From positions 1-64,000 of IMG/VR virus record IMGVR_UViG_3300036770_007495: 64,000 nucleotides of DNA. One strand, written 5' to 3'. The position numbers and the translations under genes are program-made. The notes beneath the pieces are model-generated. The model had not been told where the DNA came from, did not search any database, and saw only the letters and a program-made list of their open reading frames with translations. The first letter of the stretch is position 1, and every line of letters begins with the position of its first letter. Below, piece by piece: positions 5,418 through 63,336 of this stretch.

Positions 5418-5456
5418 GCAAATATTTATGCATGAATCATAGACGCTGCAGGTCTA

Positions 5457-11094: not shown

Positions 11095-11140
11095 AGACAA
11101 AATATTAAATCTGGCATTTATGCAGCATAATTCACCTAGC

Positions 11141-12238: not shown

Positions 12239-12563
12239 TAACAAAAATATGCAAGACCTCAAACTCGAATACACTGAACCTGACAAGGTCTATGAAACTG
12301 TGGAAACTAAACCACAAGAGCCTCAATATCGTTATTATGAAATTGAGGTGAGTCGCAGACAGACTGCTTTTGTGAATGTGCGAGTGCCACACAATGTGGA
12401 GCTCACTCACCGCAATGCTCTCGGCATTGCTGAAAAAGCAGTTGCTGATCTTATTCGCGGATATGATTGGGAGGAAGACTTCCCCATGGACATTGATGTG
12501 GAGCACTTCAAAGAGGTGACTGAATCAGAAGCAACAGCATACGACGTTTATGAGCACAACTGA
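12231..12563 (+). CDS. Hypothetical protein
   Basis: ORF coupled to ligase. Confidence 0.55.
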   Translation: MSDNKNMQDLKLEYTEPDKVYETVETKPQEPQYRYYEIEVSRRQTAFVNVRVPHNVELTHRNALGIAEKAVADLIRGYDWEEDFPMDIDVEHFKEVTESEATAYDVYEHN

Positions 12564-12858
12564 AACTGATACTCGCTTCTCAACCATTGCGCTCAGCATG
12601 CTTGGTGGTGTTGCATTGTTTATCATCACTGCCTTTTTAAGTTCAGATGCAAAGCCAAAACACAATGCACTGACACCTGAAACAATGGCAGATTATGTCA
12701 TCAATGAAATGCCTGATAGTGTTTTGCGACGCAATCTTCTCATTGTGTTTGGTGCTGAATATGGTGAAGACTCACAAGAGCTCAATGATTTGCTCAGCAT
12801 GTTCTCTCAAATGAAGATTGATCAACTGCAAAAGCAACGTAGCAAAGATTCTCTGTAA
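12550..12858 (+). CDS. Hypothetical membrane-anchored protein
   Basis: One N-terminal TM. Confidence 0.55.
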   Translation: MSTTETDTRFSTIALSMLGGVALFIITAFLSSDAKPKHNALTPETMADYVINEMPDSVLRRNLLIVFGAEYGEDSQELNDLLSMFSQMKIDQLQKQRSKDSL

Positions 12859-12863
12859 AACAG

Positions 12864-12897
12864 TTGACTGTCTGCAGATTTGCATTATAATGAATGC
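12864..12897 (+). promoter_or_regulatory. Sigma70-like early promoter, leaderless
   Basis: TTGACT-N16-TATAAT-N6-ATG. Confidence 0.8.
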
Positions 12898-14082
12898 ATG
12901 AACAATTATCTTGCTCAACACTTTTGGAACTACGAAACCAATTGCATTGATGGTCTGAAGCTGTGGAGTGCTCTGCAGCCGCACATTGCAAAAGGTGAAC
13001 TCATTGTCAACGAAGGCAAAGGTGATCGCGAAGGCCTCAAGCTTGTAACCTATTCCAAGACCTATCAGTACGAACACAATTCTGTTGCATGGGATCCTCT
13101 TGTGCAGCATTGCCGCGGCATCATCTTTGATGCAACTGATGACTACAAGATCGTAGCTCTTCCCTTCTCCAAGTTCTTCAACTATGGTGAAGGCGGCATT
13201 CATTATCCTTCCGCTGGTGCTGAGATTGAACAGGTTTGGACCAAATATGACGGTTCACTGTTCATCATCTTTCATTGGAAAGATAAGTGGCATGGAACTA
13301 CCCGCGGATCACTCAATTCAGATATTGGACAGGTGGGTCAGCAGATTCTGGATAGCTATGTGCACAATGGATTGGTTATGCATCGAGATTACACTTATCT
13401 TGCAGAGTTGATTTACAAGGAAAATCAAATTGTTGTAAATTATGGTGATGATCGCAAGCTTGTGCTGCTTGGTGTGCGTAATCGTTATGCAGGCCATGTT
13501 TATATGCCTGATTGGATCATTGATCGCTTTCATGGTGGATTGACAATTAAGCCGTTTGAAGTTGCTCGTCGTTGGAAATTTGCAAACAAAGAAGAAATGC
13601 TTGCATGGCTCAACCAAACCAAAGGTACTGAGTTTGAAGGCTTTGTGGTGCACTTCTCTGATGAAACTGTTTTCAAGTTCAAGTCTGAAGACTACATGCG
13701 TCTGCATCGCATCATTGCTCAGTTCACGTTCAAGCGTGTGCTGGAAGCTGTGCAGCTGCATCAAGAAGAAGAAATTCGCAAGGCATTGCCAGAAGAGCTC
13801 ATCCCTGAATTCGATCGTTACAAGTGGATGATTGAAGACAAAGTGGACAGCATCATTGCATATGTTGACAAGATTGTGCACAATGCTCCAAAAAGCTCTC
13901 GCAAAGAGTTTGCACTTTATTTGCAACAGTATTACAAAGGTACAGATGCAATGAAGTATGCATTCAAGTACATTGACTTTGAAATGAACGTTGACAAGCT
14001 TGGCGAGCACATTTTGCAAAGCTTGCGCCGCGATGACTTTGAAGTTGCAGAGGACAAAAACAAAGATGATATTGATTCATGA
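12898..14082 (+). CDS. RNA ligase 1 (T4 RnlA-like)
   Basis: CRGIIF, PFSKFFN, KYDGS, TRGS, FEGFVV, KFKS.DY..LHR. Confidence 0.9.
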   Translation: MNNYLAQHFWNYETNCIDGLKLWSALQPHIAKGELIVNEGKGDREGLKLVTYSKTYQYEHNSVAWDPLVQHCRGIIFDATDDYKIVALPFSKFFNYGEGGIHYPSAGAEIEQVWTKYDGSLFIIFHWKDKWHGTTRGSLNSDIGQVGQQILDSYVHNGLVMHRDYTYLAELIYKENQIVVNYGDDRKLVLLGVRNRYAGHVYMPDWIIDRFHGGLTIKPFEVARRWKFANKEEMLAWLNQTKGTEFEGFVVHFSDETVFKFKSEDYMRLHRIIAQFTFKRVLEAVQLHQEEEIRKALPEELIPEFDRYKWMIEDKVDSIIAYVDKIVHNAPKSSRKEFALYLQQYYKGTDAMKYAFKYIDFEMNVDKLGEHILQSLRRDDFEVAEDKNKDDIDS

Positions 14083-14432
14083 GAAACAACAGACCAGAAG
14101 TGTATCGGCTTCCAGCTAACAAAGAAGACTTCTTGCGCAAGTCCATGTCACTTGCATATGATGTTCGTGTCGATGAATTGGATTGCAGCAAAAGCATGTG
14201 CAGGACACAAACAGACCAAACCATTGAGCAGGTGCTGCAACATTGTCTTGCAGACAGCAAAACACATTACACCATGATTTTGCGTGATCGTAGAGATTAT
14301 GGCGGCAATTTGTATTTTGAAGTGGGAGCATCCACAATGATGAATACACCAGATTATTTTCTGTGGATTGACTTGACAGTAGAAAATGGTCGCAAGCTCA
14401 TTGAAGATTTTAATTTGGAACGTCTGCAGTAA
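14079..14432 (+). CDS. Hypothetical protein
   Basis: ATGA overlap with RNA ligase. Confidence 0.6.
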   Translation: MRNNRPEVYRLPANKEDFLRKSMSLAYDVRVDELDCSKSMCRTQTDQTIEQVLQHCLADSKTHYTMILRDRRDYGGNLYFEVGASTMMNTPDYFLWIDLTVENGRKLIEDFNLERLQ

Positions 14433-14470
14433 CTAGTTGCACAACACAAACTTATACACTATAATACAAC

Positions 14471-15331
14471 ATGATCGAAATCATTGCACACAGTACAAAC
14501 AAGCCCATTGCTTACGAACATTTCTTCTTCGGTGGTGGTGAGCAACACATCAAGCTCAATCAGAAGGATCTTGCAGATGCTTATAGTGCAACCATTTGGC
14601 TTCATTATAGCCAGGATTCAGACATTTGGAAGTTGGCATTGATTGTTGATGCGCTGCGTCGTGCTGGTATTCACATTCTGCACCTCAATATTCCTTACTT
14701 CCCTGCTGCTCGTCAGGATCGTGTTTGTGTTGCTGGTGAGCCTCTGTCTGTCAAAGTGTTTGCAGACTTCATCAATGCCATGAAATTCAGCCGTGTGACC
14801 ATTTTTGATCCTCACAGCGAAGTCACTCCTGCTCTGCTTGAAAATGTCAAAGTCGTTGACAATGCGCAGTTTGTGGGTGCAGTCTTGGGTGAGCTCAATG
14901 CACTTGATGGCACTGGCAAAACTGTGCTGGTGTCTCCTGATGCAGGCAGCAACAAGAAAGTCGCCAATGTTGCCAAATACTTGTACAACATCAGCGGCAA
15001 AGAAGTTGCTGTTGTGCGTGCTGACAAGCTGCGCAATGTTGCTACAGGTCAAATCATTGAGACCACAGTTTATGCAGATGATTTGACTGGCAAGAATTGC
15101 TTCATCATTGATGACATTTGCAGCAAGGGCGGAACGTTCTGTGCATTGGCCAAAGTGCTCAAAGCCAAAGGTGCTGCACAAGTGACTCTTGTGGTGTCTC
15201 ACTTTGAAGGTACTGCTGATATGCGCATTCTCAAGGAGTCTGGCATTGATGAAGTCATTACCACTGACAGCAAGCCCTTTGTGACTCGCAACAACAACCT
15301 CATCATCAAGAGCATCAAAGCATTCATGTAA
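14471..15331 (+). CDS. PRPP-synthetase-like protein (Adps-like ADPR-PP synthetase)
   Basis: F.GGE, PYFPAARQDR, DPHS, VSPDAGS, IIDDICSKGGTF. Confidence 0.9.
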   Translation: MIEIIAHSTNKPIAYEHFFFGGGEQHIKLNQKDLADAYSATIWLHYSQDSDIWKLALIVDALRRAGIHILHLNIPYFPAARQDRVCVAGEPLSVKVFADFINAMKFSRVTIFDPHSEVTPALLENVKVVDNAQFVGAVLGELNALDGTGKTVLVSPDAGSNKKVANVAKYLYNISGKEVAVVRADKLRNVATGQIIETTVYADDLTGKNCFIIDDICSKGGTFCALAKVLKAKGAAQVTLVVSHFEGTADMRILKESGIDEVITTDSKPFVTRNNNLIIKSIKAFM

Positions 15332-15388
15332 ATAAGTTGACTTCAATTGGGAAATACTGTATAATAACAACGTAACAGAAAAACAAAC

Positions 15389-16855
15389 ATGAACATCAAT
15401 CCTGCATCTCTCATTGACGGCTACAAAGTCGGCCACATTCATCAGTATCCCAAGAATACTGAAATCATCTTCAGCAATTTGACAGCACGTTCCACCCGCC
15501 GTCTCAACACTGACAAGGTGGTTTTCGCAGGCCTGCAGTACTTCGTCAAAGAGTACCTCATCAAGCAGTGGAATGAAAACTTCTTCCACAAGCCCATTGA
15601 AGAAGTCGTTCACAAGTTCAATCGTCGCATCAACAATTACATTGTACCTAACAATGTTGGTGATCAGCACATTCGCGACCTGCACGAGCTTGGCTATCTG
15701 CCAATTGTAATTCTTGCTCTGCCAGAAGGCACTGAACATCCCATCAAGGTGCCAAGCCTTGTCATCTGGAATACAGATGAGCGCTTTGGTTGGCTCACCA
15801 ATTATCTGGAGACCATTCTGTCCACCAGCATCTGGGGCCCTTGCACCAGCGCCACTACTGCTCACCAGTACAAAAAGTTGCTCATGAAGTATGCTGCAGA
15901 GACTGTTGGTGATACCAGCTTTGTTCAGTGGCAGGGTCATGACTTCAGCTTCCGTGGCATGTATGGTCTTGAAGCTGCTTGCATGAGTGGCGCTACTCAC
16001 CTCTTCAGCTTCACGGGCACTGACACTGTTCCTGCTATCGACTTCCTTGAACAGTACTACAATGCTGACAGCGAGAAGGAACTTGTTGGTGGCAGCGTTG
16101 CTGCAACTGAACACAGCGTCATGTGCGCTGGTGGTGCTGACAATGAGATTGGCACTTTCCGTCGTCTGATTCATGATGTGTATCCGACTGGCATTGTGTC
16201 CATTGTGAGTGACACTTGGGACTACTGGAACACCATCACCAACATTGCTCGCGAGCTCAAGGATGAAATCATGCATCGTGATGGCAAGGTTGTCTTCCGC
16301 CCCGATACTGGGGATCCAGTCAGGGTTGTCATTGGTGATGAAGATGCTGCAAAAGATTCACCTGAATATAAAGGCTCCATTGAATGTCTTTGGGAGGTCT
16401 TTGGCGGCAAGGTGAACGCCAAGGGCTACAAGGAGCTTGATCCGCATGTGGGTCTCATCTATGGTGACAGCATCACGCTGGAACGTGCTCAGCAGATCTG
16501 TGAAGGTCTCAAGCGCAAGGGCTTTGCCAGCACCAACATTGTGTTTGGCGTTGGTAGCTACACTTACCAGTATGTGACTCGTGACACTGATGGCTATGCA
16601 GTCAAGGCAACCTATGCCAAGATTGATGGTCAGGATAAGGAAATCTTCAAGTCTCCCAAGGGTGCTGCATTCAAGAAGAGTGCCAAGGGTCTGACTGCTG
16701 TCTTCAAGGATGCTGATGGTGAGTTCTACCTCAAGGATCAGGCCACTTGGGATGAAGTTCACAACTGCGAATTCGTTGAAGTGTTTGCTGATGGTCATGT
16801 CGTCAAGGATTATACTCTGCAGGAAGTTCGCAACAACCTGGCTCAATACGTCTAA
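15389..16855 (+). CDS. Nicotinamide phosphoribosyltransferase-like protein (Namat-like)
   Basis: DGYK.GH..QYP, HDFSFRG, ATEHSVM, VSDTWD, RPDTGDP, IYGDSIT, KKSAKG. Confidence 0.93.
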   Translation: MNINPASLIDGYKVGHIHQYPKNTEIIFSNLTARSTRRLNTDKVVFAGLQYFVKEYLIKQWNENFFHKPIEEVVHKFNRRINNYIVPNNVGDQHIRDLHELGYLPIVILALPEGTEHPIKVPSLVIWNTDERFGWLTNYLETILSTSIWGPCTSATTAHQYKKLLMKYAAETVGDTSFVQWQGHDFSFRGMYGLEAACMSGATHLFSFTGTDTVPAIDFLEQYYNADSEKELVGGSVAATEHSVMCAGGADNEIGTFRRLIHDVYPTGIVSIVSDTWDYWNTITNIARELKDEIMHRDGKVVFRPDTGDPVRVVIGDEDAAKDSPEYKGSIECLWEVFGGKVNAKGYKELDPHVGLIYGDSITLERAQQICEGLKRKGFASTNIVFGVGSYTYQYVTRDTDGYAVKATYAKIDGQDKEIFKSPKGAAFKKSAKGLTAVFKDADGEFYLKDQATWDEVHNCEFVEVFADGHVVKDYTLQEVRNNLAQYV

Positions 16856-16864
16856 TCAAAACAA

Positions 16865-17113
16865 ATGAAAAACAAAATCCTCAAAACTCTGTTTGTGTTC
16901 GGCTTGTGGAGCATTCCATTTGCATTCATCGAACGCACTGAACAAATCACTCGCAAGTATCTTGCACTGGGTCAAATGGAAAACTCTGAAGTCAATTATC
17001 AGATGTTCCAAATGGCCAGCAACATCAACTACGTCAATTCCTTTGTTGCTGTGTGTGCCATTGTAGCTCTTGTTGCAATCTGGAAACCCAAAAAAGCAGT
17101 TGAAACCAAGTAA
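16865..17113 (+). CDS. Small two-TM membrane protein
   Basis: Two hydrophobic segments; upstream of SPFH gene. Confidence 0.6.
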   Translation: MKNKILKTLFVFGLWSIPFAFIERTEQITRKYLALGQMENSEVNYQMFQMASNINYVNSFVAVCAIVALVAIWKPKKAVETK

Positions 17114-17155
17114 AAATCATCTACAATTAACTCGTTAAAGAAAGAAACAAACAAA

Positions 17156-18217
17156 ATGAAATACACCAAACTCGTTACTCTACTCGCTGTTGCCATCACC
17201 ATGCTGATGAGCTCTTGCCGTCCATACAATGTGCCTGACATTCAGCAGATTGCACCCAATGAAACTGCTTTCCTGGTGCCTCTGGAGGGTGAGCGCGACA
17301 AACAGGTCAAGTTTGACTCTGAAGAATTCCTGGAGAAGAACAAGATCAGCGTGGGCCGAATTGAGATCCCCAAGAAGTGGCGCCAGACTGGCCGACTTTG
17401 GATGGATGGTGAATACATTCCAGAACTGATCCTCATCAAAGTTGATCGTGCTCCTGTGACTGTTCAGTGGCAGAGTTCAGTTGATGCCAATGGCAGGCCC
17501 ATTCGACGTCAAGGTGATGATTCCATCTGGATTGAGAGTCAGGACTCTGTGGGCTTCAGCATTGGATTCAATGTGAGTGCATACATCGAAGCGCAGAATG
17601 CCAGCAAGTTCCTTTACATGTATGCTGGTCGAGCACTCAAGGATGTCATGGATACTGAAGTGCATGGTCGAGTCATGGAAGTGGCACAGACGTTTGCAGC
17701 CAAGCAGAAGATGGACAAGCTGCGTGAAATGAAGGGTGAGATGTCAGAATCCATTCAGACTGATGTCAAGAAGTTCTTCCTGGAGCGAGGCATCACCATC
17801 ACCAACATTGGTATGTTTGGAGGCTTTGTCTACGAGAACGAAGAAATTCAGAAGGCCATTGATGGTGTGTTTGTTGCACAGCAGGAGAAGAACAAGAACC
17901 AGGCTACGTTTGAAGCGCAGGATGCCATCAACCAGAAGATGCTGTCTGAAGCAGAAGCCAAGGCATCTGCCTTCCAGAAAGAAGCTGAAGGCAAGGCTGC
18001 TGCATACAAGCTGGAAGCTGCAGGCAAGGCTGAAGCCATTACACTAGAAGCCAAGGCTCTTCAGGAAGCACAGAGCAATCCACTCTACATTGAGATGCAG
18101 CGCCTGAATGTGACCAAGGAGTTCAATACTCGCTGGGATGGCAAGCTGCCGCAGAGCTACATTGGCACTGACAATGTGACGACTCTCATGGGCATTCCCG
18201 GACTCAAGGTTCAGTAA
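17156..18217 (+). CDS. SPFH/band-7 domain lipoprotein
   Basis: Lipobox LMSSC; IQKAID, EAEGKA coiled-coil repeats, RWDGKLP. Confidence 0.8.
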   Translation: MKYTKLVTLLAVAITMLMSSCRPYNVPDIQQIAPNETAFLVPLEGERDKQVKFDSEEFLEKNKISVGRIEIPKKWRQTGRLWMDGEYIPELILIKVDRAPVTVQWQSSVDANGRPIRRQGDDSIWIESQDSVGFSIGFNVSAYIEAQNASKFLYMYAGRALKDVMDTEVHGRVMEVAQTFAAKQKMDKLREMKGEMSESIQTDVKKFFLERGITITNIGMFGGFVYENEEIQKAIDGVFVAQQEKNKNQATFEAQDAINQKMLSEAEAKASAFQKEAEGKAAAYKLEAAGKAEAITLEAKALQEAQSNPLYIEMQRLNVTKEFNTRWDGKLPQSYIGTDNVTTLMGIPGLKVQ

Positions 18218-32256: not shown

Positions 32257-33249
32257 ATGAAATTAGCTTCTATTGAACTCATCTCTGACATTCAGCCTCA
32301 TCCCAATGCTGACAAACTGGACCTAGCCAAAGTGCTGGGCTACACATGCATCATTGAAAAGGGTAAATACAAAGTTGGTGATGCTGTTGTGCTCATTCAG
32401 CCTGATACTGTGCTGCCTGATGAATCTTGGGCTGAAGTCTTTAAGAAGAAGTCCAATAGGGTGAAGGCAATTCGCTTGCGTGGTTGTTGGTCATTTGGTA
32501 TTGTTATGCCTGTAGCCACATTCTTTGATGATGTGAAGTCTGTAATGGATTTTGCACCAGGCACTGAAGTATCTCATCTCATTGGCGTTACCAAGTACGA
32601 AGCTCCTCAGCCTCAGCAGCTGGACGCCAAAGGTCACTTGCCTTTTGGTCTGGGCAAGACTGATGAAGAACGTTATCAGAACATTCTTGACTTGCCATTT
32701 GGTGAGGTGGTTGATGTGACTCTCAAGATTGATGGTCAGAGTGCCACCTACTACTGCCACAAAGACAGGCAGACTGGTGAATGGACTACTGGCATCTGTT
32801 CTCGTTCCCTTGAAATGAAGCCAGAGTGCAGCAACAACTATACTAACATTGATCGCAAGTATGGTATTCTCAACAACCTGCAAGACTACTGCAAGTTCCA
32901 TGATGTGAGTTTGGCTCTGCGTGGTGAAATCTACGGCAATGGCATTCAGGGTCATGGCAACAACCCTCATGCCAAGATGCCTCTGAACTTCGCAGCGTTC
33001 AGTGTTTACAACTTTGATACCTTCCAGTATGAAAATGCTGGCGATGAACATTATTATGCCAATGTGTGCCATCGAATTGGCATTCCTGTTGTGGACCATG
33101 TTGAAAAGGCAGTTCTAACTCCAGAGCTCATCAAGCACTATGCTGAAGACATCTCTGAAATCAATGGTCGTGCCTTTGAAGGTGTGGTCATCAAGCACAG
33201 CACAGGGTCGTTTAAAATTATCAATATGAGCTACGATGAACGCAAATAA
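32257..33249 (+). CDS. RNA ligase, DRB0094-like family (N-terminal OB domain)
   Basis: KLASI..I..I.PHPNADKL, KTDEER.QN, KIDGQS, GEIYG.GIQ, FEGVVIK, SFKII. Confidence 0.85.
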   Translation: MKLASIELISDIQPHPNADKLDLAKVLGYTCIIEKGKYKVGDAVVLIQPDTVLPDESWAEVFKKKSNRVKAIRLRGCWSFGIVMPVATFFDDVKSVMDFAPGTEVSHLIGVTKYEAPQPQQLDAKGHLPFGLGKTDEERYQNILDLPFGEVVDVTLKIDGQSATYYCHKDRQTGEWTTGICSRSLEMKPECSNNYTNIDRKYGILNNLQDYCKFHDVSLALRGEIYGNGIQGHGNNPHAKMPLNFAAFSVYNFDTFQYENAGDEHYYANVCHRIGIPVVDHVEKAVLTPELIKHYAEDISEINGRAFEGVVIKHSTGSFKIINMSYDERK

Positions 33250-35866: not shown

Positions 35867-36578
35867 TATGAGACATTTGCTGCATCATATCGTTCGTGGC
35901 TGTGGTGAGTTGCCCACTTTTGGACACCACCCAGGCACACCCATTGTAATAATGTTCATCATTGCATTCACCATTGCAACGGGATGGCATGGCTTGTTGG
36001 TGAGTTGTTTGCTGTTCTTGCCCATTTATTTGTGGGGTGCCTATCATCGCTCCATTGACGATCCTGAAAAATAATGGTTGATTGTTGATGGAAACACTGC
36101 ATATTACAACATGAACGACAAAAATGAATTCATTGATGATGCACATGCATTGCGATTGATTCTTGCAGGCTTCTCTCTCATGGGCATTCGCTGCAATTCT
36201 CCAAATGCAAATGCAGAAACGGCAGCATCCATTGCACTTGATGATGCAGATGCAATTCTGCGCATGAGCAAGCAAAAGAACAAAAAGATCAAACAAAAAA
36301 ACAATGAATCTAAAGCTGATCAATGAAGTGGCAACACTTGCCAAACACATGCAAGTGAAATATCCGCATTTGCGTCAAGGGCAGGCTCTCATGAATGCAT
36401 TGCACGAAGTTGATGCCAACATGTACAAGCAAATTGATCAAACTGATGCAGACTGCTTCTATCAAGATGCACGCATTGAGAAGTTCTGGAACATCATTGC
36501 ACATGCTGAGACTCAAGCTTTGAATCAATAATTTGCTTCATCATCAATGCAGCATCCATGTGTACAATAAATATCCAC

Positions 36579-47889: not shown

Positions 47890-48244
47890 TGTTGCATGAC
47901 TGACGAACAATGCCCCACATGCGGATGCACCATTGGTGGTGGGTGCCCACAAAGCACTCAAGAGGAAATTGAAGCATACAAGCAACGCCATCCTGAAGAG
48001 CAAGATGATGAGGAACTCATTCTCTCTCATTAATCTGAATGATGATTTGAGAGACACTACCAAACATATTGGAAGGTAGAAGAGGAGCTCAAAATGAGCA
48101 GATGAGGTTGTGCATCTCATCTGCTCACCTCTTCAACATCCCCTTCTGGAAATGAGGAATGCATTTTGAGATGATGGCGCAAAATGGCGAGCTGGTTCCT
48201 TCTTTTTTAGTTGAATACTTCAAAATTGATGCTATTATAAGAGC

Positions 48245-48481
48245 ATGAAAGAAAAGATTATTGCATTCATTTTTGGGGATGGTGAGGTTGAAAGCAAGAT
48301 TTTTGGGCAGGAAGATGTGGAAGTGTGGGAGAGGGGTATGGGATGGGGATGTGTGAGTTTGGATGATGTGGAATTTCGAATTGTGGATGATGTGGTGATG
48401 GTAATGGGAGAGAGTGTGGAGAAGGTGAAGGAAGGGGTGAAGAAGGTGAAAGTGTATGATGCGGAACAAGATTATGGATGA
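48245..48481 (+). CDS. C-depleted small acidic protein
   Basis: 7 C in 237 nt; leaderless promoter; starts MKEK. Confidence 0.55.
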   Translation: MKEKIIAFIFGDGEVESKIFGQEDVEVWERGMGWGCVSLDDVEFRIVDDVVMVMGESVEKVKEGVKKVKVYDAEQDYG

Positions 48482-48939
48482 TGTGGCAAAATAGGAGCAT
48501 TAATGTGATGCATTAAGTGCATGAATGGAGTGAGTTTCCCATTCATGGGAAATGCATAATGCAGGCACACTCATCTTCATCATCACCCTTCATACTTCAA
48601 GTGGAACCTTTTTTGTGATGCTGGCATCTTGCTCGTTTCCGGCAGCATAAAATATTTTATTTTTAAGTTGATGATTCTCTATCAGCATCTATAATGTTGG
48701 TATGGAGAACGAACTCAAAAATAAATTGAAAGAAGTGGAGCAACAAATTCAAAATGTCCAAAATTTTGGATATTGCCGGGAATGTCTCGACATTTTGGTG
48801 CAACAAAAAGAGTGGCTGGAGGGTCTGATCGCCAATTTTTGCGAATAAAACTTGAAAGGGAAAGGCAGCTAAAAGGCTGCCTTTCCCCCCCCCCCTTTTT
48901 TTTATTTGATTAATTAGTGGGGTGAGGTATAGTGTGAGT

Positions 48940-49269
48940 ATGAAAGAAAAATTTAATTTTGAAGAGGATATGGATTTGGTGAAAGTGGAATTGATGGATG
49001 ATGGTGATTGGGAGTATTTGAGAATGGGAATTGGAGAGTGTGAGGGTAGGGTGTTTGTGGTTGATTTGGATGATAGTGGAGAAGAAGAAAGGGAAATGAA
49101 ATATGTGAAAGAAGGATTGAGTGTTGAGGATGTTTGTAAGATTGGAATTGAAGTGGGAGTGTTTGTTGATAGTAGTGAGTGGGGGTATGATGAAAGAGAT
49201 AAGGTGAGGGTGAAGATGGAGTGTGAGGAGAAGGATTGGGAGGAATTTTTTAGGAGGTTGAAGGAGTGA
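48940..49269 (+). CDS. Cytosine-free gene encoding a 109-aa acidic protein
   Basis: TTGATT-N16-TATAGT-N6-ATG; open 109 codons; no C on coding strand; no A/P/T/H/Q residues. Confidence 0.65.
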   Translation: MKEKFNFEEDMDLVKVELMDDGDWEYLRMGIGECEGRVFVVDLDDSGEEEREMKYVKEGLSVEDVCKIGIEVGVFVDSSEWGYDERDKVRVKMECEEKDWEEFFRRLKE

Positions 49270-49451
49270 AGGTGTGGTGGAACCTTCAAAAGAAGATGAG
49301 GAGGTGGTGATGAGAGTGTGAGGTTGGGAGGATGAGTGTGTGGTGATGATGGGGTGGTGTGGAAATGATGGGGGGAAGTGGTGATGGTGGCTGCATTTGC
49401 AGTTCCGCCTTTTTTTAGTTGATTACATCTCAAAAGAAGTTATGATGTTGT

Positions 49452-49652
49452 ATGGACATTAAATCTTATGACATCAACAAACAAGAATGTATCATCAACT
49501 TTCTTAATGTGGACAGAAAGGTGAGTTTTAGTGATAATGGGGATATTGATGTGGAACCCATTAATGATTTGAATGAACAGGAAGAGAAAGATTTGTTTGA
49601 TGAGATTTTGAATAGTGAAGAAATCAACAAACTCTTTCCTTACGACTCTTAA
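49452..49652 (+). CDS. Small acidic protein
   Basis: Leaderless promoter TTGATT...TATGAT-N5-ATG. Confidence 0.55.
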   Translation: MDIKSYDINKQECIINFLNVDRKVSFSDNGDIDVEPINDLNEQEEKDLFDEILNSEEINKLFPYDS

Positions 49653-49699
49653 AGAAGAGTAAGAGATGAGATGAGAGGACATCTTAATGATGTCCTTTC

Positions 49700-50420
49700 T
49701 TTTTGTTTGCAAATGGAACCAAATAGAATGAATGAGTGAGTGATGGAGTGGTGAGGAGGAGTGATGTAGAGGTGAGGTGAATGTGGAACCAAAAATGGAG
49801 GAGTGAAGGAGTGAATAGAGTGAATAAATGAAGGAGTGAATGAAGATGTTTCCTTTTGCAATTGGAACCAAAAATGTATGAGTGAATGAATGAATGAATG
49901 AATGAATGAATGAAGGAGAGGTGAGGAGGAGTGATGGAGTGAATGAAGATGTTTCCTTTTGCAATTGGAACCAAAAATGTATGAGTGAAGCTTTATGCTC
50001 AAATTATGCATAATGCAGATTAGATGTTGATGAGGATATGAGAAGCATTTATATTCATTCATGCACTCATTTCTGGAACATCTTTATGCCATCTGCTCAT
50101 CACTCATTATGTTGATGATGATGCTGGTGGAACAAATGAAGAGCATTAAGGTGAGCATTATGCTCATCATTCTCTTTTGCATCTGGAACCTTTCTTATCC
50201 TCTCTTTATCTCAATTGATGGTGAGGTGTGGATGAATGTTGTGATGAATGATGTGATGAATGATGAAATGGAACTCATGAATGATGGAGTGGTGATGAGT
50301 GAATGTGGTGAGGTGTGGATGAGTGATGTGATGAATGATGAAATGGAACTCATGAATGATGATGAGGTGATGAGTGGGAGGGTGAGTGGGAGGGTGAGTG
50401 AATGGCGTTCCGGATGAAGA
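49700..50420. repeat. G/A-rich non-coding repeat tract (candidate origin or genome end)
   Basis: 54-bp exact repeat at 49833 and 49936; (GAAT)7; duplicated GATGTGATGAATGATGAAATGGAACTCATGAATGATG; recurring TGGAAC. Confidence 0.75.
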
Positions 50421-55835: not shown

Positions 55836-56444
55836 ATGATGCATTTTGAAACAATGTTGCTTGCACTAGAGGCAAGATTGCAACACAATGAACAAACCAA
55901 AGGATTGGATGCATTCATGAGCCAATTGAATGATGCATTTCCAGACAAGTGGCAATCATTTGCTGCATTGAGAAACATCATTCTTCAATCCAAGTGTCCA
56001 GAGATTCGATTTGAAAGCATTCGTGCACTAGGAATATCCATGGGCGACAAATGCATCATCAGCAACAGTGTATTGCGATCTTCTTTTGCACATGCTGTGT
56101 ATGTGATTTTGCATGAGATTGCTCATCAGATGCAATATACAAAATATGGCGAGGATTTTGCTGCGGCCATTTTTATGCATGATATACCAGATGCACAAAT
56201 GGTTCAAATGCTCAGAAAAATTGAATTGACTGCTGATCGTTATGCCATTGCCAAAGGCAAGCAGGTTCTTCGCAATGCAGGTGCAACAGATGTACCAGTG
56301 ACGCGCAGCATGTACAAATCAATGAGCGATGCATCTTTGCTCAGTCACATTCACAATGTGCGTGCAAATGCAAAGAAGCACAATCTCAACACCGTCATGG
56401 ACATCAATGAATGGATTTACAACTCCATCAAAAACGCTTTGTAA
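55836..56444 (+). CDS. HExxH zinc metallopeptidase-like late protein
   Basis: ILHEIAH...E..AD; TAAATA upstream. Confidence 0.65.
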   Translation: MMHFETMLLALEARLQHNEQTKGLDAFMSQLNDAFPDKWQSFAALRNIILQSKCPEIRFESIRALGISMGDKCIISNSVLRSSFAHAVYVILHEIAHQMQYTKYGEDFAAAIFMHDIPDAQMVQMLRKIELTADRYAIAKGKQVLRNAGATDVPVTRSMYKSMSDASLLSHIHNVRANAKKHNLNTVMDINEWIYNSIKNAL

Positions 56445-58146
56445 TTTTATATATTCTATTACTACTATCTTTATACACTTGTAGTGTAGATAAATTGATG
56501 TTTATTCCTTTGTCTCTCAACCTGTTTATTGCTGTATAGAGTGTTTGCACGTGATATGGACTGTTTGAAAAATCGCCCACATCACCTTCTTTTGCATTTA
56601 CAAGAAAATTAGTTAGCGACTTCCATGCAACTTTTAATTGATCATCGGTCTTTCTTGTGATTGATGACACAATGTAGCTGTTGCTTTTATCACGATTTAT
56701 AGTAAACTTTTTGATAAAATCATTCTCACCAGCAAGCTTCATTGCAATTTTTAAATTTGCCATATTCATTGGGGTACCGCGGCTTGTAATATAATTTGTT
56801 AAATCAATGCTTTCTCCTGGCTTTAAGCTACGGATGCGATCTGTTAGTGTTTTTCTCTCTTCACCTTGTTTCAACTTTCTAATAGAAGTTACAAGTGTTT
56901 TTTCTTTGTTTGCAAATTGTATGTCGTATGAATTGAGGGGCTGCTTCAATCTAAAAATATTAGCCTCAAGAGAGGATCTCTTTGTAGGTGGATTAAACAC
57001 ATAAGCATCTCCACCAGGTTCAAGATTTATAACTATATCGCGAAGTGTGTGCAATTTGCGTCTATTAATTACATGCTCTTGTTGACCGAGTCGCCTAATT
57101 GCTGATATATGCATTTTATCGCTATCAACATATTTAAAATCAAATTGATTGATGCTCGTGCCCAGTCTGCTTGTGAATTGTCGAATAGAACTACGTTTTA
57201 TCGGGGATTTAAAAACATGCCAATCATCTCCCGGCTGTAAATTTGCAATAACGTTATATAGGTTTTGTATATAGGGTGTCTTTTTAAAGATAATGCGCAT
57301 CATCTCCACCGCTTGCGACTTATCACCACCTTTATAGGGGTTGACGTATATTGGCACCAGACCAAGGCCCTTCCCGAAATCATTTGCAATATAATCTGCG
57401 ACATTTGCTGCATAAGCAACGTATTTTTGTCGTTTTCGCATATTTAAACCATAGCTAACTTTAGGTGTGCTGCTATCTTCAGCTGGAGCAAGCTCATTAT
57501 ATGCTGGATTATTGAACACCGCCTCGTCTTTAGGATTAAAAGGTGGTATTATTCGCTCATCTGTTTTATATCCTGTCTTCTGTGTTCTAAAAGCTACTGT
57601 TACAAACAGCAGACCCTCCGCGCTCAAGAGTTTACTTGCAAGGTAAATATCCGTGAGCTTACTTTCATCAAGAACACCAATATAATCAAGGTCAATTACA
57701 TTAACAGATGCATCTTTGATGTTCTTTAATTCATTTGTTTTTATATTTTTTAGAGCTTGCTTGCCGTCAAGAACTCTGCTTATTGTACTTGTAACATACC
57801 TTTTGAATTTTTTACTATATGGCATCCAAACATTTACTTGTTGTTCTTTGATGAGATCAAATGCAGCAGGTAGTACCTCTTGTTTCAAGACATCCAACTT
57901 AAACTCAGCGCCGTATATATCTGTAACAGCAAAATTACGCTCTAAGAGTAATTTTTCAAAAGAAAATATATGCGGAAGTGATAAAATTTTCAAACCACCA
58001 CTATTACTCAATCTATCAAGTGATTGCTTGACACGGCCAACTGATAAATATGTATGCCTGTCATGTATTTTGTTGGCAAACTTATTAAAGCTATATCTTG
58101 TACTAGCCTCTACTGTCAATTTGAAATATTCATCAAACGTAATCAT
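56428..58146 (-). CDS. Putative SAM-dependent methyltransferase-fold protein with C-terminal repeats
   Basis: KILSLP...IYGAE...VIDLDYIG...EGLLFVT; four L.PG[DE]-type repeats; atypical AT-rich codons. Confidence 0.5.
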   Translation of the reverse strand: MITFDEYFKLTVEASTRYSFNKFANKIHDRHTYLSVGRVKQSLDRLSNSGGLKILSLPHIFSFEKLLLERNFAVTDIYGAEFKLDVLKQEVLPAAFDLIKEQQVNVWMPYSKKFKRYVTSTISRVLDGKQALKNIKTNELKNIKDASVNVIDLDYIGVLDESKLTDIYLASKLLSAEGLLFVTVAFRTQKTGYKTDERIIPPFNPKDEAVFNNPAYNELAPAEDSSTPKVSYGLNMRKRQKYVAYAANVADYIANDFGKGLGLVPIYVNPYKGGDKSQAVEMMRIIFKKTPYIQNLYNVIANLQPGDDWHVFKSPIKRSSIRQFTSRLGTSINQFDFKYVDSDKMHISAIRRLGQQEHVINRRKLHTLRDIVINLEPGGDAYVFNPPTKRSSLEANIFRLKQPLNSYDIQFANKEKTLVTSIRKLKQGEERKTLTDRIRSLKPGESIDLTNYITSRGTPMNMANLKIAMKLAGENDFIKKFTINRDKSNSYIVSSITRKTDDQLKVAWKSLTNFLVNAKEGDVGDFSNSPYHVQTLYTAINRLRDKGININLSTLQVYKDSSNRIYKITKRF

Positions 58147-58612: not shown

Positions 58613-59056
58613 GGGGGCGAACTGGCTTCGACTCAATTGGTTGATTCAGATTCGCATGCAGAGGTAGACTAGCTGGCCTCTATAAAAGCAAGTCAAAAAA
58701 CATAAACGCAGAAGACACTGAAGTCGATGCCCTCTTGGCGCAAGCTGAGTACATCTTCAACAATGCTGACGAATTCCTCGTCAACGAAGTTGAAATGGCA
58801 CTCGCTGCCTAAGCAAAAACAATGTTGGATCCTATTAAAAACATTGAGGCAAGCAATAGGTGGAGCTGAACAATGTATGCTCTTAAATCAAACATTGGGG
58901 TGATGTCAGACTCTTCACTGACATAGGTAGGCTCTAAAACTCAGGTTGATGCGCCATGCAAACCTTTTGCCAATGAAATTGCAAATGCATCCAAGCATGT
59001 AGACGGTTTGATGATGTTGATTGAACACAGGGGTTCGACTCCCCTCGCCTCCACCA
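58613..59056 (+). ncRNA. ssrA: tmRNA
   Basis: GGGGGCGAACTGGCTTCGAC 5' end; GGTTCGACTCCCCTCGCCTCCACCA 3' end; G3.U70; tag ORF 58708-58812 ending ALAA*. Confidence 0.95.
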
Positions 59057-59067
59057 TAAATAACAAG

Positions 59068-60084
59068 ATGATTGCATTTGAAAAATTTTACAATATTCGC
59101 GTCGTAAATGAATCAACAAGACGCAGCTTTTTAAAACAGTTAATGGGTACTGTTGCTGCAGCAATAGGGTCACCAGCTACAGCAACAAAAGCATTGGCTG
59201 CGCAGCCTTCTAAATTTTCTTATGATTTGACTAATGCAATGAGCATTGACTCCATTGCAAATTACATTGTTGACTTCGGAAACGGTAGCAGGCTTTCTGA
59301 GGAAGCACTGCTTAAAAAAGCAAAAAAAATACATGATGAATTTGCTGCAGGTAAAATAAATGCTAAAACTATCAAACAACTGATTGCATATGATAATAGT
59401 TGGATTGATGTTTTACAAACAGTTGAGCGTGAAGCATTAGAAAACTTTATAGAACAGAACCAACAAAAGCTATCACCATACATGGGCGATGAGAACAATG
59501 GGCTGTTCTTGGATGCGTTGCATGGTGTGTTGGACGATTTATCTAACACAGACGCATTGGAGGAGTTGCGACAAGGATTTTTGGCAGGTGACAGCCACGA
59601 TGTTTTTAAATATATCGTACCCGGCGACATAAAAATAAATGGTAAAGTTATCATGACGCAGCAGCAAGCCATTGACAAGGGCATCTTTGAGACAATGAAT
59701 AATGTCATTTCAGCTACTGTTGAGTATGTTAACGAAACTGCTGATTATTTCATGGAAACAAATCTTGATAATAAATCTGTAGATGATGCAGATGAATATG
59801 CGGATGAATATGCAATCGATGATGCTGGTCATCAAGATATTGAGTACTCACCAGCAGATTACAAAGGTAGTTGGGAAAATGATCCTGATTATCAATCATT
59901 GTCCATGGGCGAGAGCATTGTTGCTGAAAAAAGCATTCACGATCCAGTGAGACCCGGCATTCTCAAACGTCAAGTCAAGGGCAAAATGACTTGCAGCAAA
60001 GCCCGCTCACTCAAATCCAAACAAAAGAACAAGGGCAACAACACAGCAAAAGCTGCACAGCGGTATCTAAATTATCACTGCTGA
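59068..60084 (+). CDS. Late protein with internal twin-arginine motif
   Basis: TAAATA upstream; MIAFEKFY..VVNE-STRRSFLK + hydrophobic stretch + ALA. Confidence 0.7.
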   Translation: MIAFEKFYNIRVVNESTRRSFLKQLMGTVAAAIGSPATATKALAAQPSKFSYDLTNAMSIDSIANYIVDFGNGSRLSEEALLKKAKKIHDEFAAGKINAKTIKQLIAYDNSWIDVLQTVEREALENFIEQNQQKLSPYMGDENNGLFLDALHGVLDDLSNTDALEELRQGFLAGDSHDVFKYIVPGDIKINGKVIMTQQQAIDKGIFETMNNVISATVEYVNETADYFMETNLDNKSVDDADEYADEYAIDDAGHQDIEYSPADYKGSWENDPDYQSLSMGESIVAEKSIHDPVRPGILKRQVKGKMTCSKARSLKSKQKNKGNNTAKAAQRYLNYHC

Positions 60085-60098
60085 ACATAAATAAACAT

Positions 60099-60371
60099 AT
60101 GCAATTTGATGATTTGTTTCAAAAAATCTTGGAAGCTCCTGCTACAGCACCAGTGCGAACACCAGCACCTGTAAGAACACCAGCACCAGCCAGACCAACA
60201 CCTGCAAAACCAAGTCGTCCAAGTTGGTTGCCAGATCCAGGCACCAAAACTCGTCCCAAGGCAATGCGTGATGAAGAAAATGAGGATGTTGCAATTGATC
60301 CAAGCATTGAACAACATGATAAAAAGGTTCTTCAAAAGAGACTTGAACGCCGCCGCAACTTTTTAAAATAA
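60099..60371 (+). CDS. Pro-rich late protein
   Basis: MQFDDLFQKILEA; PVRTPA repeats. Confidence 0.65.
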   Translation: MQFDDLFQKILEAPATAPVRTPAPVRTPAPARPTPAKPSRPSWLPDPGTKTRPKAMRDEENEDVAIDPSIEQHDKKVLQKRLERRRNFLK

Positions 60372-62306: not shown

Positions 62307-62397
62307 GGAGAGAGCCCGGCTAGACGAGGAGCAATCTTGGAAAGATTGTAACACTTCGAAAGAGGTGTTAAGGGTGCGAGTCCCTTTCTCTCCTCCA
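62307..62397 (+). tRNA. tRNA-Ser(GGA)
   Basis: CAATC-TT-GGA-AA-GATTG; long variable arm; T-loop TGCGAGT; CCA. Confidence 0.8.
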
Positions 62398-62403
62398 TTT
62401 TAT

Positions 62404-62493
62404 GGGCAGTTAACTAGACAAGCGCGCTGGGACCGACTTGAAATCGGATCGAGGTCGAAAGGCCTTGGGGTGCAAGCCCTCAGCTGCCCGCCA
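62404..62493 (+). tRNA. tRNA-Ser(TGA)
   Basis: CCGA-CT-TGA-AA-TCGG; long variable arm; T-loop TGCAAGC; GCCA. Confidence 0.82.
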
Positions 62494-62499
62494 TTTTAT

Positions 62500-62574
62500 G
62501 CGGATATAATTCAGTGGTAGAATATCTCGTTGCCAACGAGAGTGTCGTCGGTTCAAATCCGACTATCCGCTCCA
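62500..62574 (+). tRNA. tRNA-Gly(GCC)
   Basis: Canonical cloverleaf, TCCA. Confidence 0.95.
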
Positions 62575-62655
62575 ATTAACCGTAGTGGAGAATCTACGGC
62601 ATAACAAAATCTCTTAGATTGCAGAAACCTAACAAAACGCTGCGCCTATTTCAAA

Positions 62656-62732
62656 CGGGATGTAGCTCAGCCTGGTAGAGCGCTTGCTTTGGGAGCAAGA
62701 TGTCGTCGGTTCGAATCCGGCTATCCCGACCA
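62656..62732 (+). tRNA. tRNA-Pro(TGG)
   Basis: Canonical cloverleaf, ACCA. Confidence 0.95.
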
Positions 62733-62934
62733 ATTTTGCGGAGCAGAAATGCTAGTGTGCGGCCGAAAGACTGATGATGCGGCGTTTCGGGTAAAACCTC
62801 GCGATCATCTCGCAAATTTAGATGTGGGTGAAAGTCCCAGAAGCATCACAGATGCTTGTTCCACGACGGGCTCTAAAGACTTGAACTGACAAGTGCAAGG
62901 GTGAGTGTAAAGGTACTCCCCACAAATTTCAAAT

Positions 62935-63009
62935 GCGGTGTAGATGTTAATGGCTGCACACCTGACTTCCAATCAGAAGGAGGGGGTTCGATTCCCCCAC
63001 ACCGCACCA
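62935..63009 (+). tRNA. tRNA-Gly(TCC)
   Basis: CTGA-CT-TCC-AA-TCAG; TTCGATT; ACCA. Confidence 0.88.
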
Positions 63010-63013
63010 ATTT

Positions 63014-63234
63014 TATCAGAAGGAAGTTGGCTTAGAAGCAGCCATCTATAATGAGTGAAGCGAAGTACGAGTCTCCAACATCAACGGCCTAGTAAGGTGA
63101 CTGTGATAATGCATGATGTATCAGAGTCAGATATTGGCTCATGCGTTGGATATCGTCTGACTGCGGATAGTAAAAGAGCACCCCGTAAATGGTAAGGCTT
63201 AATTCTTCTTAGGCGTAACAGCACACCTCTGATA
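63014..63234 (+). ncRNA. 23S rRNA GTPase-associated-centre (H43/H44) mimic with internal insertion
   Basis: GTTGGCTTAGAAGCAGCCATC and GCGTAACAGCACAC match the L11-binding domain; closed by TATCAGA/TCTGATA. Confidence 0.75.
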
Positions 63235-63242
63235 TATTTTAA

Positions 63243-63336
63243 GGATCCATGACAGAGCCTGGTATTGTACGTCCCTGCTAAGGACAGGTCAGCCCCTAAA
63301 AAGGCTGCGTAGGTTCAAATCCTACTGGATCCGCCA
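63243..63336 (+). tRNA. tRNA-Ser(GCT)
   Basis: GTCC-CT-GCT-AA-GGAC; long variable arm; TTCAAAT; GCCA. Confidence 0.92.

What the first reader, a model, noticed from the sequence alone, without database searches (positions are those of the whole stretch)
59068..60084. Cryptic Tat signal behind a putative prohead-protease site
Seen: MIAFEKFYNIRVVNE|STRRSFLKQLMGTVAAAIGSPATATKALA|AQP. Known: T4 internal proteins have an N-terminal capsid-targeting peptide removed after (I/L)xE; the Tat consensus is S/T-R-R-x-F-L-K + h-region + AxA. Inference: the protein is packaged, trimmed, injected, then exported by the new host's Tat system (or jams it). A second IVAE site precedes a basic C-terminal mini-domain, suggesting a polyprotein.
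Basis: partly seen in the sequence, partly recalled or inferred. Interest (0 to 1): 0.68.

Follow-up and report, generated by a model that had tools for sequence, protein, structure and literature searches.

The report
Phage head protein with Tat signal
A T4-like phage gene encodes what looks like a capsid-packaged, protease-trimmed polyprotein whose cargo begins with a strictly conserved twin-arginine export signal, which suggests (untested) that the virion delivers a ready-made protein that the newly infected cell exports to its own periplasm.

Summary
The window belongs to a complete 224.7-kb T4-like phage that has a gp21-type prohead protease. The protein has four parts. First is a 15-aa leader of the T4 capsid-targeting (CTS) type, ending V-N-E. 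Second is a Tat-type signal, STRRSFLK plus an uncharged h-region and ALA|A. Third is a helical cargo domain with no known relatives. Fourth is a 51-aa basic module that follows a second h-x-E site (IVAE|K). In all 18 family members, M1, E15, T17, R18, R19 and F21 are invariant. The C-terminal module is a single-copy, extremely conserved gene of T4-like phages. Its minimal form is a 61-67 aa ORF made of a 10-aa T4-like CTS (such as MKTFKDYIVE|K) plus the module, which is what a small internal head protein looks like. The gene also carries the same NATAAATA-N5-ATG late element as the head and tail genes. The CTS and polyprotein reading is therefore well supported by comparison. The Tat motif is under selection, but it is not "cryptic", because RR at residues 18-19 would also work untrimmed. 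Export after injection is plausible, new and untested. No tool here can show packaging, cleavage or export.

The parts
59055..59062 (+). CATAAATA, a T4-type late-promoter-like element exactly 5 nt before the ATG. It implies late and probably leaderless expression.
   Evidence: The same NATAAATA-N5-start occurs before gp15, the gp21 protease, tail genes and other ORFs, 38 in all. It also occurs before the homologues in L007, L008 and L174; L175 has a one-mismatch variant.
59068..59112 (+). Residues 1-15, MIAFEKFYNIRVVNE: a CTS-like leader with a predicted prohead-protease cut after E15.
   Evidence: T4 IPII and IPIII start MKTYQEFIAE|A; IPI starts MKTFKEF...ITE|A. F4 is invariant among the 12 full-length members and M1 and E15 among all 18; Y8 is nearly invariant. 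The phage's own major capsid protein has WCLNE|S at its likely maturation site.
59113..59199 (+). Residues 16-44: a Tat-type signal with STRRSFLK, an uncharged h-region and A-L-A|A.
59215..59766 (+). Residues 50-233: helical cargo domain with one beta-hairpin; function unknown.
   Evidence: AlphaFold2 pLDDT is about 70-93, dipping to 52-60 around residues 131-160. No convincing fold match. Only 11 representative relatives among 1.84 billion proteins.
59767..59916 (+). Residues 234-283: acidic, disordered linker with the conserved stretch IEYSPADYKGxWxxDPDYQSLSMGES.
59917..59928 (+). Residues 284-287, IVAE: the second predicted protease site, with the cut before K288.
   Evidence: Nearly all of about 70 carriers have E one to three residues before the (I/V)HDPVRPG core, mostly as h-x-E|K. 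In minimal genes this E is the last residue of the 10-aa CTS.
59929..60084 (+). Residues 288-338 plus the stop codon: a conserved basic module (KSIHDPVRPGILK...NYHC), interpreted as a small internal head protein.
58613..59056 (+). Phage-encoded tmRNA that ends 12 nt before the ATG (context only).
60099..60371 (+). Neighbouring 90-aa proline-rich basic protein with leader MQFDDLFQKILE|A and its own CATAAATA-N5-ATG; a likely second internal protein.
56428..58146 (-). Neighbouring 572-aa protein that starts MITFDEYFKLTVE|A (CTS-like). It has a weak methyltransferase-like match and internal repeats.

Best explanation
The gene encodes a late-expressed internal head polyprotein of the T4 kind. Its order is a capsid-targeting leader (1-15), a cargo (a Tat-type signal at 16-44, a helical domain at 50-233 and an acidic linker), and then a conserved basic internal-protein module (288-338). 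The inferred course is as follows. The leader takes the precursor into the prohead core. The phage's gp21-type protease cuts after E15 and after E287. Cargo and module then stay in the head and leave with the DNA at the next infection. The trimmed cargo starts S-T-R-R-S-F-L-K, which has the same short n-region as this phage's ordinary Tat proteins (MNRREFL..., MNTLTRRNFV...). The new host's Tat system would then export it to the periplasm before any phage gene is expressed. What is shown: the motifs, their conservation, the modular architecture, the T4-like protease, the late-gene element and the single-copy module. What is inferred: packaging, both cuts, ejection and Tat export. My estimates are about 0.7 that the leader is a working CTS, about 0.7 that the RR motif is a working Tat signal, and about 0.4 for the whole chain including export after injection.
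For: The genome is T4-like: gp15, gp20 portal, Peptidase_S77 (E 9e-36) and gp23. The T4 leaders were read from NC_000866. In the T4 CTS, residues 4 and 7 target and residues 8 and 10 govern processing, and ip genes are recognised by this leader (PMC9026906; PMC12373910). In the family, E15, T17, R18, R19 and F21 are invariant in 18 members, including module-less ones. The module is present once per genome in G000 and in 5 of 5 large IMG/VR phages, all of which encode Peptidase_S77, and also in the cultured Flavobacterium phage immuto. The minimal genes are a 10-aa leader (MKTFKDYIVE, MATFKEYFEE, MQTFKQYLLE) placed directly before the module. Selection on the module acts on the protein: codon position 3 differs 50-64% against 13% at positions 1 and 2. 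The late element NATAAATA-N5-ATG is shared with structural genes. Only 6 of the 38 late-element genes match the CTS pattern, so the leader is not a by-product of leaderless starts. The likely MCP maturation site WC[LIF]xE|[SAG] is conserved in five of six related phages. Synteny next to the tRNA array resembles that of the T4 ip genes. Because the only copy of the module is fused behind the Tat cargo, the precursor must reach the prohead rather than be lost to the periplasm.
Against: There is no experimental evidence of any kind and no cultured relative of the cargo-bearing phage. A simple regular expression for CTS-like N-termini is not specific: it gives 5 hits in 132 T4 ORFs (3 true, 2 false) and 8 in 318 here. 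Some module carriers (NT5C fusions and the MILKESPDYL family) have no CTS-like start. RR at 18-19 would be a normal Tat signal without trimming, so export in the producing cell is not excluded. The genome's only PF00959 lysozyme has the same leader followed by a membrane segment. If that lysozyme is merely the endolysin, the leader may have a role other than packaging. The window's own protein scores just below the TIGR01409 cut-off.
Confidence: 0.4

Rival explanations
1. It is an ordinary Tat-exported late phage protein. The precursor is made in the infected cell and exported there to the periplasm, for example for superinfection exclusion or envelope remodelling. The first 15 residues are only a long n-region and the h-x-E is never cut.
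For: RR at residues 18-19 lies within the usual range, and the uncharged stretch of 15 or more residues and the A-x-A site are standard. The phage already uses host Tat for two DUF1501 proteins that have plain signals. The late element also precedes one of those genes.
Against: This does not explain why F4, Y8 and E15 are as conserved as the RR motif across cargo domains that are 18-30% identical. It does not explain why the same leader heads non-exported proteins such as the minimal module gene. It does not explain why the genome's only copy of a highly constrained, non-exported-looking basic module is fused to the C-terminus.
Confidence: 0.22
2. It is a packaged internal protein, but the RR and hydrophobic stretch is not used for Tat export. 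It may act as a membrane-insertion or membrane-tethering segment when the protein is ejected at the cell envelope, as with the leader plus TM lysozyme. Alternatively it may hold the precursor at the inner membrane, where T4-type proheads start to assemble.
For: A second late protein, the genome's only lysozyme, combines the same leader with a plain hydrophobic segment, and this is conserved in about 20 homologues. Ejection proteins of podophages are membrane-active without using export signals (established knowledge).
Against: The full S/T-R-R-x-F-L-K consensus is invariant, which is far more specific than a membrane anchor requires. The h-regions are Ala/Gly/Thr/Pro-rich and only weakly hydrophobic, as in Tat signals and unlike transmembrane helices.
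Confidence: 0.25
3. The motifs are a chance combination or a relic: a host Tat protein was captured into an internal-protein locus and its signal is now functionless.
For: The cargo domain is accessory: it is absent from five related complete phages.
Against: No bacterial homologue of the cargo exists among 1.84 billion representatives. The motif has stayed invariant through deep divergence. The chance expectation is about 7e-4.
Confidence: 0.03

Closest known systems
Phage T4 internal proteins IPI, IPII, IPIII (CTS-bearing, gp21-processed, injected)
   Same: An N-terminal leader of 10-19 aa with an aromatic residue at positions 4 and 7 and an h-x-E cut site. The products are small and basic. 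The genes are non-core and variable, lie next to the tRNA genes, and the genome has a gp21-family protease.
   Different: There is no sequence similarity beyond the leader. Here a large cargo with an export signal sits between the leader and the basic module. The module is single-copy and far more conserved (77-96% identity) than the T4 internal proteins, which are hypervariable.
T4 Alt (packaged ADP-ribosyltransferase cut by gp21 at both ends)
   Same: A functional cargo carried in the head and predicted to be trimmed at an N-terminal and a C-terminal site.
   Different: Alt acts in the cytoplasm and has no export signal. Its C-terminal propeptide is not a conserved independent protein.
Bacterial and phage Tat substrates (for example the DUF1501 proteins of this same phage)
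   Same: The S/T-R-R-x-F-L-K motif, a weakly hydrophobic h-region and an A-x-A site.
   Different: A conserved 13-16-aa leader ending in an invariant Glu sits directly before the S/T-R-R. A non-exported-type basic module is fused at the C-terminus.
Ejection proteins of T7 (gp14/15/16), P22 (gp7/16/20) and SPN3US/phiKZ-like phages
   Same: Virion-stored proteins that act at or in the envelope of the newly infected cell. In the giant phages they are trimmed by the prohead protease.
   Different: Those proteins reach the envelope directly on ejection. None is known to use a host export signal.

Membership tests
T4-type internal head proteins (CTS-bearing) | N-terminal leader with aromatic residues at positions 4 and 7 that ends in a hydrophobic-x-Glu processing site | tested here: met
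   MIAFEKFYNIRVVNE has F4, F7 and V13-N-E15. F4 and E15 are invariant in the family alignments. It was compared with the T4 leaders read and with the rule given in PMC9026906.
T4-type internal head proteins (CTS-bearing) | Encoded by a phage with the T4 head-assembly set, including the gp21 (Peptidase_S77) protease | tested here: met
T4-type internal head proteins (CTS-bearing) | Expressed with the late (head) genes | tested here: inconclusive
   It shares the NATAAATA-N5-ATG element with the gp15, gp21 and tail genes.
T4-type internal head proteins (CTS-bearing) | Physically present in the mature head, with the leader removed, and injected with the DNA | not testable with these tools
   This needs virion proteomics or N-terminomics.
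Tat (twin-arginine) substrates | S/T-R-R-x-F-L-K motif within the first ~35 residues | tested here: met
   S16-T-R-R-S-F-L-K23. It is invariant or nearly so in 18 members. TIGR01409 matches 12 of 12 members, with the window's protein at 14.8 bits against a cut-off of 16.7.
Tat (twin-arginine) substrates | An uncharged h-region of at least 13 residues and a signal-peptidase site | tested here: met
   There are 15-36 uncharged residues in the 12 full-length members. P0001 has A-L-A|A; the sites in relatives are plausible but variable.
Tat (twin-arginine) substrates | The host has a Tat system and export depends on it | not testable with these tools
   The host is unknown. Indirect support: the phage carries two DUF1501 genes with plain Tat signals.
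Pfam, PHROG or PDB families for the cargo or the module | A significant profile or fold match | tested here: not met
   Nothing in Pfam or PHROGs. Nothing by PDB sequence profile. Nothing from Foldseek, VIA-align or the Atlas.

The most novel reading that the evidence does not exclude
A clade of T4-like phages pre-loads its capsid with envelope-addressed effectors, placing a capsid-targeting leader directly in front of a host export signal. The prohead protease removes the leader and exposes a minimal Tat signal (here), or a membrane anchor in the case of the lysozyme. The first event of infection, before any transcription, is then that the host's own Tat or Sec machinery places phage proteins in the periplasm. 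This would be a two-address protein: first the capsid, then the next cell's periplasm.
Probability: 0.3. Interest if true: 0.85.

Novelty: new variant of a known kind. Interest (0 to 1): 0.72.

Why it matters
Injected phage proteins are known to act in the cytoplasm (anti-restriction, ADP-ribosylation) or, in podophages, to build a channel. A virion-delivered protein that is then routed by a host export pathway would add a new compartment to the reach of injected effectors. It would be an immediate periplasmic action, such as exclusion of competing phages, envelope repair or inhibition of periplasmic defences. Independently of that, the work identifies a previously undescribed, single-copy, very highly conserved 52-aa basic protein of aquatic T4-like phages. 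That protein behaves as a fusion platform for diverse cargo (GNAT, NT5C, DUF5661, the Tat cargo). It also gives a sequence rule, leader plus h-x-E, for finding packaged proteins in uncultured T4-like phages. The leader-cargo design can be tested directly with the established T4 CTS packaging system.

Tried and rejected
1. Pfam, PHROGs and NCBIfam gave no family for the cargo or the module; only the Tat-signal models matched.
2. Fold searches of the full model and of the module alone gave only weak helical-bundle rows, with Z at most 6.2 and Foldseek E above 0.4. The PDB sequence profile found nothing.
3. A regular-expression enrichment test for CTS-like N-termini first looked strong: 8 hits against 0.8 expected from internal Met positions. 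The T4 control showed about 1.5% false positives at real N-termini, so I do not rely on it.
4. I tested whether the leader is a by-product of A/T-rich leaderless starts. This is rejected: only 6 of the 38 genes with the late element match the CTS pattern.
5. I tested whether the leader is a general feature of membrane or exported proteins. This is rejected: the DUF1501 proteins and several late proteins that start with a transmembrane segment lack it, and soluble proteins have it.
6. I tested whether the module is conserved as DNA, through a mobile element or recent transfer. This is rejected, because third codon positions are near saturation.
7. I looked for the cargo as a separate gene in five related complete phages and did not find it.
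8. megablast against cultured phages found no near relative.
10. Complex prediction was not used, because a TatC-peptide model would not separate the rival explanations.
11. Searches were input slips of mine and returned errors.

Full report
**Observation.** It starts 12 nt after a bona fide tmRNA gene at 58613-59056 (ARAGORN; Rfam 98 bits). It lies about 2.2 kb upstream of a tRNA array at 62309-63336. There is no other in-frame start before M26. The ATG is preceded by CATAAATA at a spacing of exactly 5 nt (59055-59062).

**What genome this is.** The window is the first 64 kb of a 224,703-bp IMG/VR virus record with direct terminal repeats. The record encodes a T4-type morphogenetic set:
- gp15;
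- the gp20 portal;
- a Peptidase_S77 (gp21) prohead protease (E 9e-36);
- a scaffold-sized ORF;
- the gp23 major capsid protein.

No cultured phage is close at the DNA level. The T4 processing rule, hydrophobic-x-Glu, is therefore a fair hypothesis to bring to this protein. The phage's own capsid protein has WCLNE|S near the position of the T4 gp23 LTE|A site. Five of six related phages keep WC[LIF]xE followed by a hypervariable Gly/Ser-rich stretch, which is what a maturation junction looks like.

**The family.** The word search found about 12 full-length metagenomic homologues at 36-73% identity. An exhaustive profile search with the cargo domain alone found only 11 representatives among 1.84 billion proteins, and none is bacterial. 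The remote members (P0092, P0094-P0098) lack the C-terminal module. They still keep the N-terminal design, for example MNIFNKTYHELME|ATRR, MKLFNELYCFYIE|STRR and MTEFDLIIE|ATRR.

In an alignment of the 18 N-termini, the only invariant columns are M1, E15, T17, R18, R19 and F21. L22, K23 and P36 are nearly invariant. F4 is invariant and Y8 nearly so among the 12 full-length members. The cargo domains behind them share only 18-69% identity. The Glu before the S/T-R-R is therefore as constrained as the twin arginines.

**The Tat part.**
- All 12 full-length members have S/T/A/G/V-T-R-R-x-F-(L/I)-(K/G) followed by 15-36 uncharged, Ala/Gly/Thr/Pro-rich residues.
- P0001 has A-L-A|A.
- TIGR01409 matches 12 of 12 members, with a best E of 1.5e-4. 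The window's protein scores 14.8 bits against a cut-off of 16.7.
- The same phage encodes two DUF1501 proteins with ordinary Tat signals at the extreme N-terminus (MNRREFLRV..., MNTLTRRNFVLN...), so its host evidently has Tat.

After a cut at E15 the cargo would start ST-RR. That n-region is as short as those two. The signal is not cryptic, however. RR at 18-19 is within the range of natural Tat signals (established knowledge), so trimming is not required for recognition.

**The leader.** I read the T4 leaders from NC_000866. IPII and IPIII start MKTYQEFIAE|A, and IPI starts MKTFKEF...ITE|A. According to the review PMC9026906, residues 4 and 7 carry the targeting and residues 8 and 10 the processing. 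The leaders are 10-19 residues long. Internal-protein genes of T-even phages are recognised by this leader (PMC12373910). P0001 has F4 and F7 and ends V-N-E at 13-15. Relatives end in IIE, LME, YIE, VSE and FNE.

**The C-terminal mini-domain decided the case.** It is not in Pfam or the PDB. It occurs at the end of dozens of otherwise unrelated proteins, including GNAT, NT5C, DUF5661 and ParB-like domains. Alignment A3 shows 83% mean column identity across 20 architectures, with invariant H, C and terminal C and a near-invariant His before the last Cys.
- In IMG/VR, 101 loci encode the module.
- All five large records tested have a Peptidase_S77 protease and exactly one copy of the module, as does G000.
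- The cultured T4-like Flavobacterium phage immuto also has it.
- It is more conserved (77-96% identity) than the capsid protein (67-76%).
- Third codon positions differ 50-64% against 13% at positions 1 and 2, so the constraint is on the protein.
- Its minimal form is a 61-67-aa ORF consisting of a 10-residue T4-like leader set directly against the module. Examples are MKTFKDYIVE|KGIHDPVRPG, MATFKEYFEE|KSIHD, MITFKEYITE|KKSIHE and MQTFKQYLLE|KNIND.

That is the anatomy of a small basic internal head protein. In nearly all the longer carriers a Glu lies one to three residues before the module's (I/V)HDPVRPG core, most often as h-x-E|K. P0001 has IVAE|K at that junction. The most economical reading is that cargo domains have been inserted between the leader and the internal-protein module, and that a protease site is kept on each side.

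**Expression.** NATAAATA occurs 59 times in the genome. Thirty-eight copies sit 4-7 nt, mostly exactly 5 nt, before the start of an ORF. These ORFs include gp15, the protease, tail genes, P0001, its downstream neighbour and the lysozyme. The element is also before the homologues in L007, L008 and L174, with a one-mismatch variant in L175. It precedes 27 of 75 module genes elsewhere. This is the T4-type late promoter consensus, placed so that late mRNAs would be leaderless. It supports late expression but is motif evidence only.

**Context.** In G000, L007 and L008 the gene is followed by three features:
- a proline-rich basic 90-106-aa protein with leader MQFDDLFQKILE|A;
- a 404-aa acidic protein;
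- a tRNA array.

Upstream on the other strand, a 572-aa protein begins MITFDEYFKLTVE|A. In T4, ipI, ipII and ipIII likewise flank the tRNA genes.

**Controls and caveats.**
- A regular expression for CTS-like starts hits 8 of 318 ORFs here, but also 5 of 132 in T4, of which only 3 are true. Counting alone proves little.
- The leader is not a side effect of leaderless, A/T-rich starts: only 6 of the 38 late-element genes match the pattern.
- It is not a general mark of membrane proteins either.
- Some module carriers lack such a leader.
- The genome's only PF00959 lysozyme has the design leader (MQDFKTFYRQHLIE|E), transmembrane segment, linker, lysozyme, and this is conserved in about 20 homologues. 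This is either a second case of 'capsid address followed by envelope address', or a warning that the 15-residue leader has another role.

**Structure.** In the AlphaFold2 model, residues 1-48 and 234-297 have low confidence. Residues 50-233 form a helical domain with one hairpin, at pLDDT mostly 70-93 with a dip to 52-60 around residues 131-160. The module folds as three short helices, with mean pLDDT 79 when modelled alone. No fold match rises above the background for helical proteins. The cargo's biochemical function remains unknown.

**Mechanism and rivals.** My best explanation has three steps: packaging through the leader, cuts at E15 and E287, and ejection followed by Tat export in the newly infected cell. 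The main argument against export in the producing cell is that the sole copy of a strongly constrained head-type module is fused behind the Tat cargo. The precursor must therefore reach the prohead. The rivals are as follows:
- ordinary export in the producing cell, with an uncut n-region;
- a packaged protein whose RR and hydrophobic stretch acts as a membrane segment or assembly tether rather than as a Tat signal;
- a functionless relic.

I put the full chain at about 0.4 and the rivals at 0.22, 0.25 and 0.03.

**Literature.** The held literature has no paper that links capsid-targeting sequences or injected phage proteins with twin-arginine signals. That is absence in one library, not proof of novelty.

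**Verdict.** It is a new variant of a known kind, the T4 internal proteins, with an unusual and testable twist.

Noticed in passing
G000-wide; in the window e.g. 59055-59067, 60086-60098, 5417-5430(-), 36566-36578: NATAAATA lies exactly 5 nt (range 4-7) before the start codon of 38 ORFs, including the gp15, gp21 protease and tail genes. The T4-type late promoter is positioned so that late mRNAs would be leaderless. The same arrangement is seen in related metagenomic phages.
   Followed up: partly
window 58613-59056 (+): A phage-encoded tmRNA (Rfam RF00023, 98 bits) with an atypical tag region. It ends 12 nt before the studied gene.
   Followed up: partly
G000 72465-77873 (L005 2465-7873): Two DUF1501 genes with plain Tat signals flank a PSCyt2/PSD1 (DUF1549/DUF1553) gene, just upstream of gp15 and gp20. 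These are Planctomycetes/Verrucomicrobia-type auxiliary genes. The nearest bacterial homologues are Verrucomicrobiales MAGs at 42-45% identity. A 73%-identical fragment sits on a 2.6-kb contig binned as Crocinitomicaceae. This is only a hint about the host.
   Followed up: partly
G000 184636-185523 (L011 1137-2024): The only PF00959 lysozyme of the genome carries a CTS-like leader (MQDFKTFYRQHLIE|E), then a transmembrane segment, a linker and the lysozyme domain. The design is conserved in about 20 homologues. It may be a packaged, membrane-anchored lysozyme or an unusual SAR-type endolysin.
   Followed up: partly
IMG/VR loci L014-L093; window 59929-60081: A 52-aa basic module with conserved H, C, H and C is a single-copy gene of aquatic T4-like phages and is more conserved than the capsid protein. 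It occurs alone behind a 10-aa leader, or fused to GNAT, NT5C, DUF5661, ParB-like and other domains. It is not in Pfam.
   Followed up: yes
window 48000-50400: A C-poor, G/A/T-rich stretch (GC skew 0.52 over 2 kb) with imperfect GTGATGAATGATG-type tandem repeats, and a C-run followed by a T-run at about 48885-48904. Unexplained.
   Followed up: partly
window 56428-58146 (-): A 572-aa protein with a CTS-like start, a weak methyltransferase-like match (PF20553, E 0.03) and four internal repeats of about 45 aa. It may be an injected enzyme analogous to T4 Alt.
   Followed up: no
L007 7392-8102: In one relative, a GIY-YIG homing-endonuclease-like ORF is inserted between the homologue of the studied gene and the proline-rich gene.
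   Followed up: no
window 10024-18217 and 32257-33249: A nucleotide and RNA-repair gene set: ATP-dependent DNA ligase, T4 Rnl1-type and Rnl2-type RNA ligases, NAMPT, and an SPFH/Band 7 protein.
   Followed up: no
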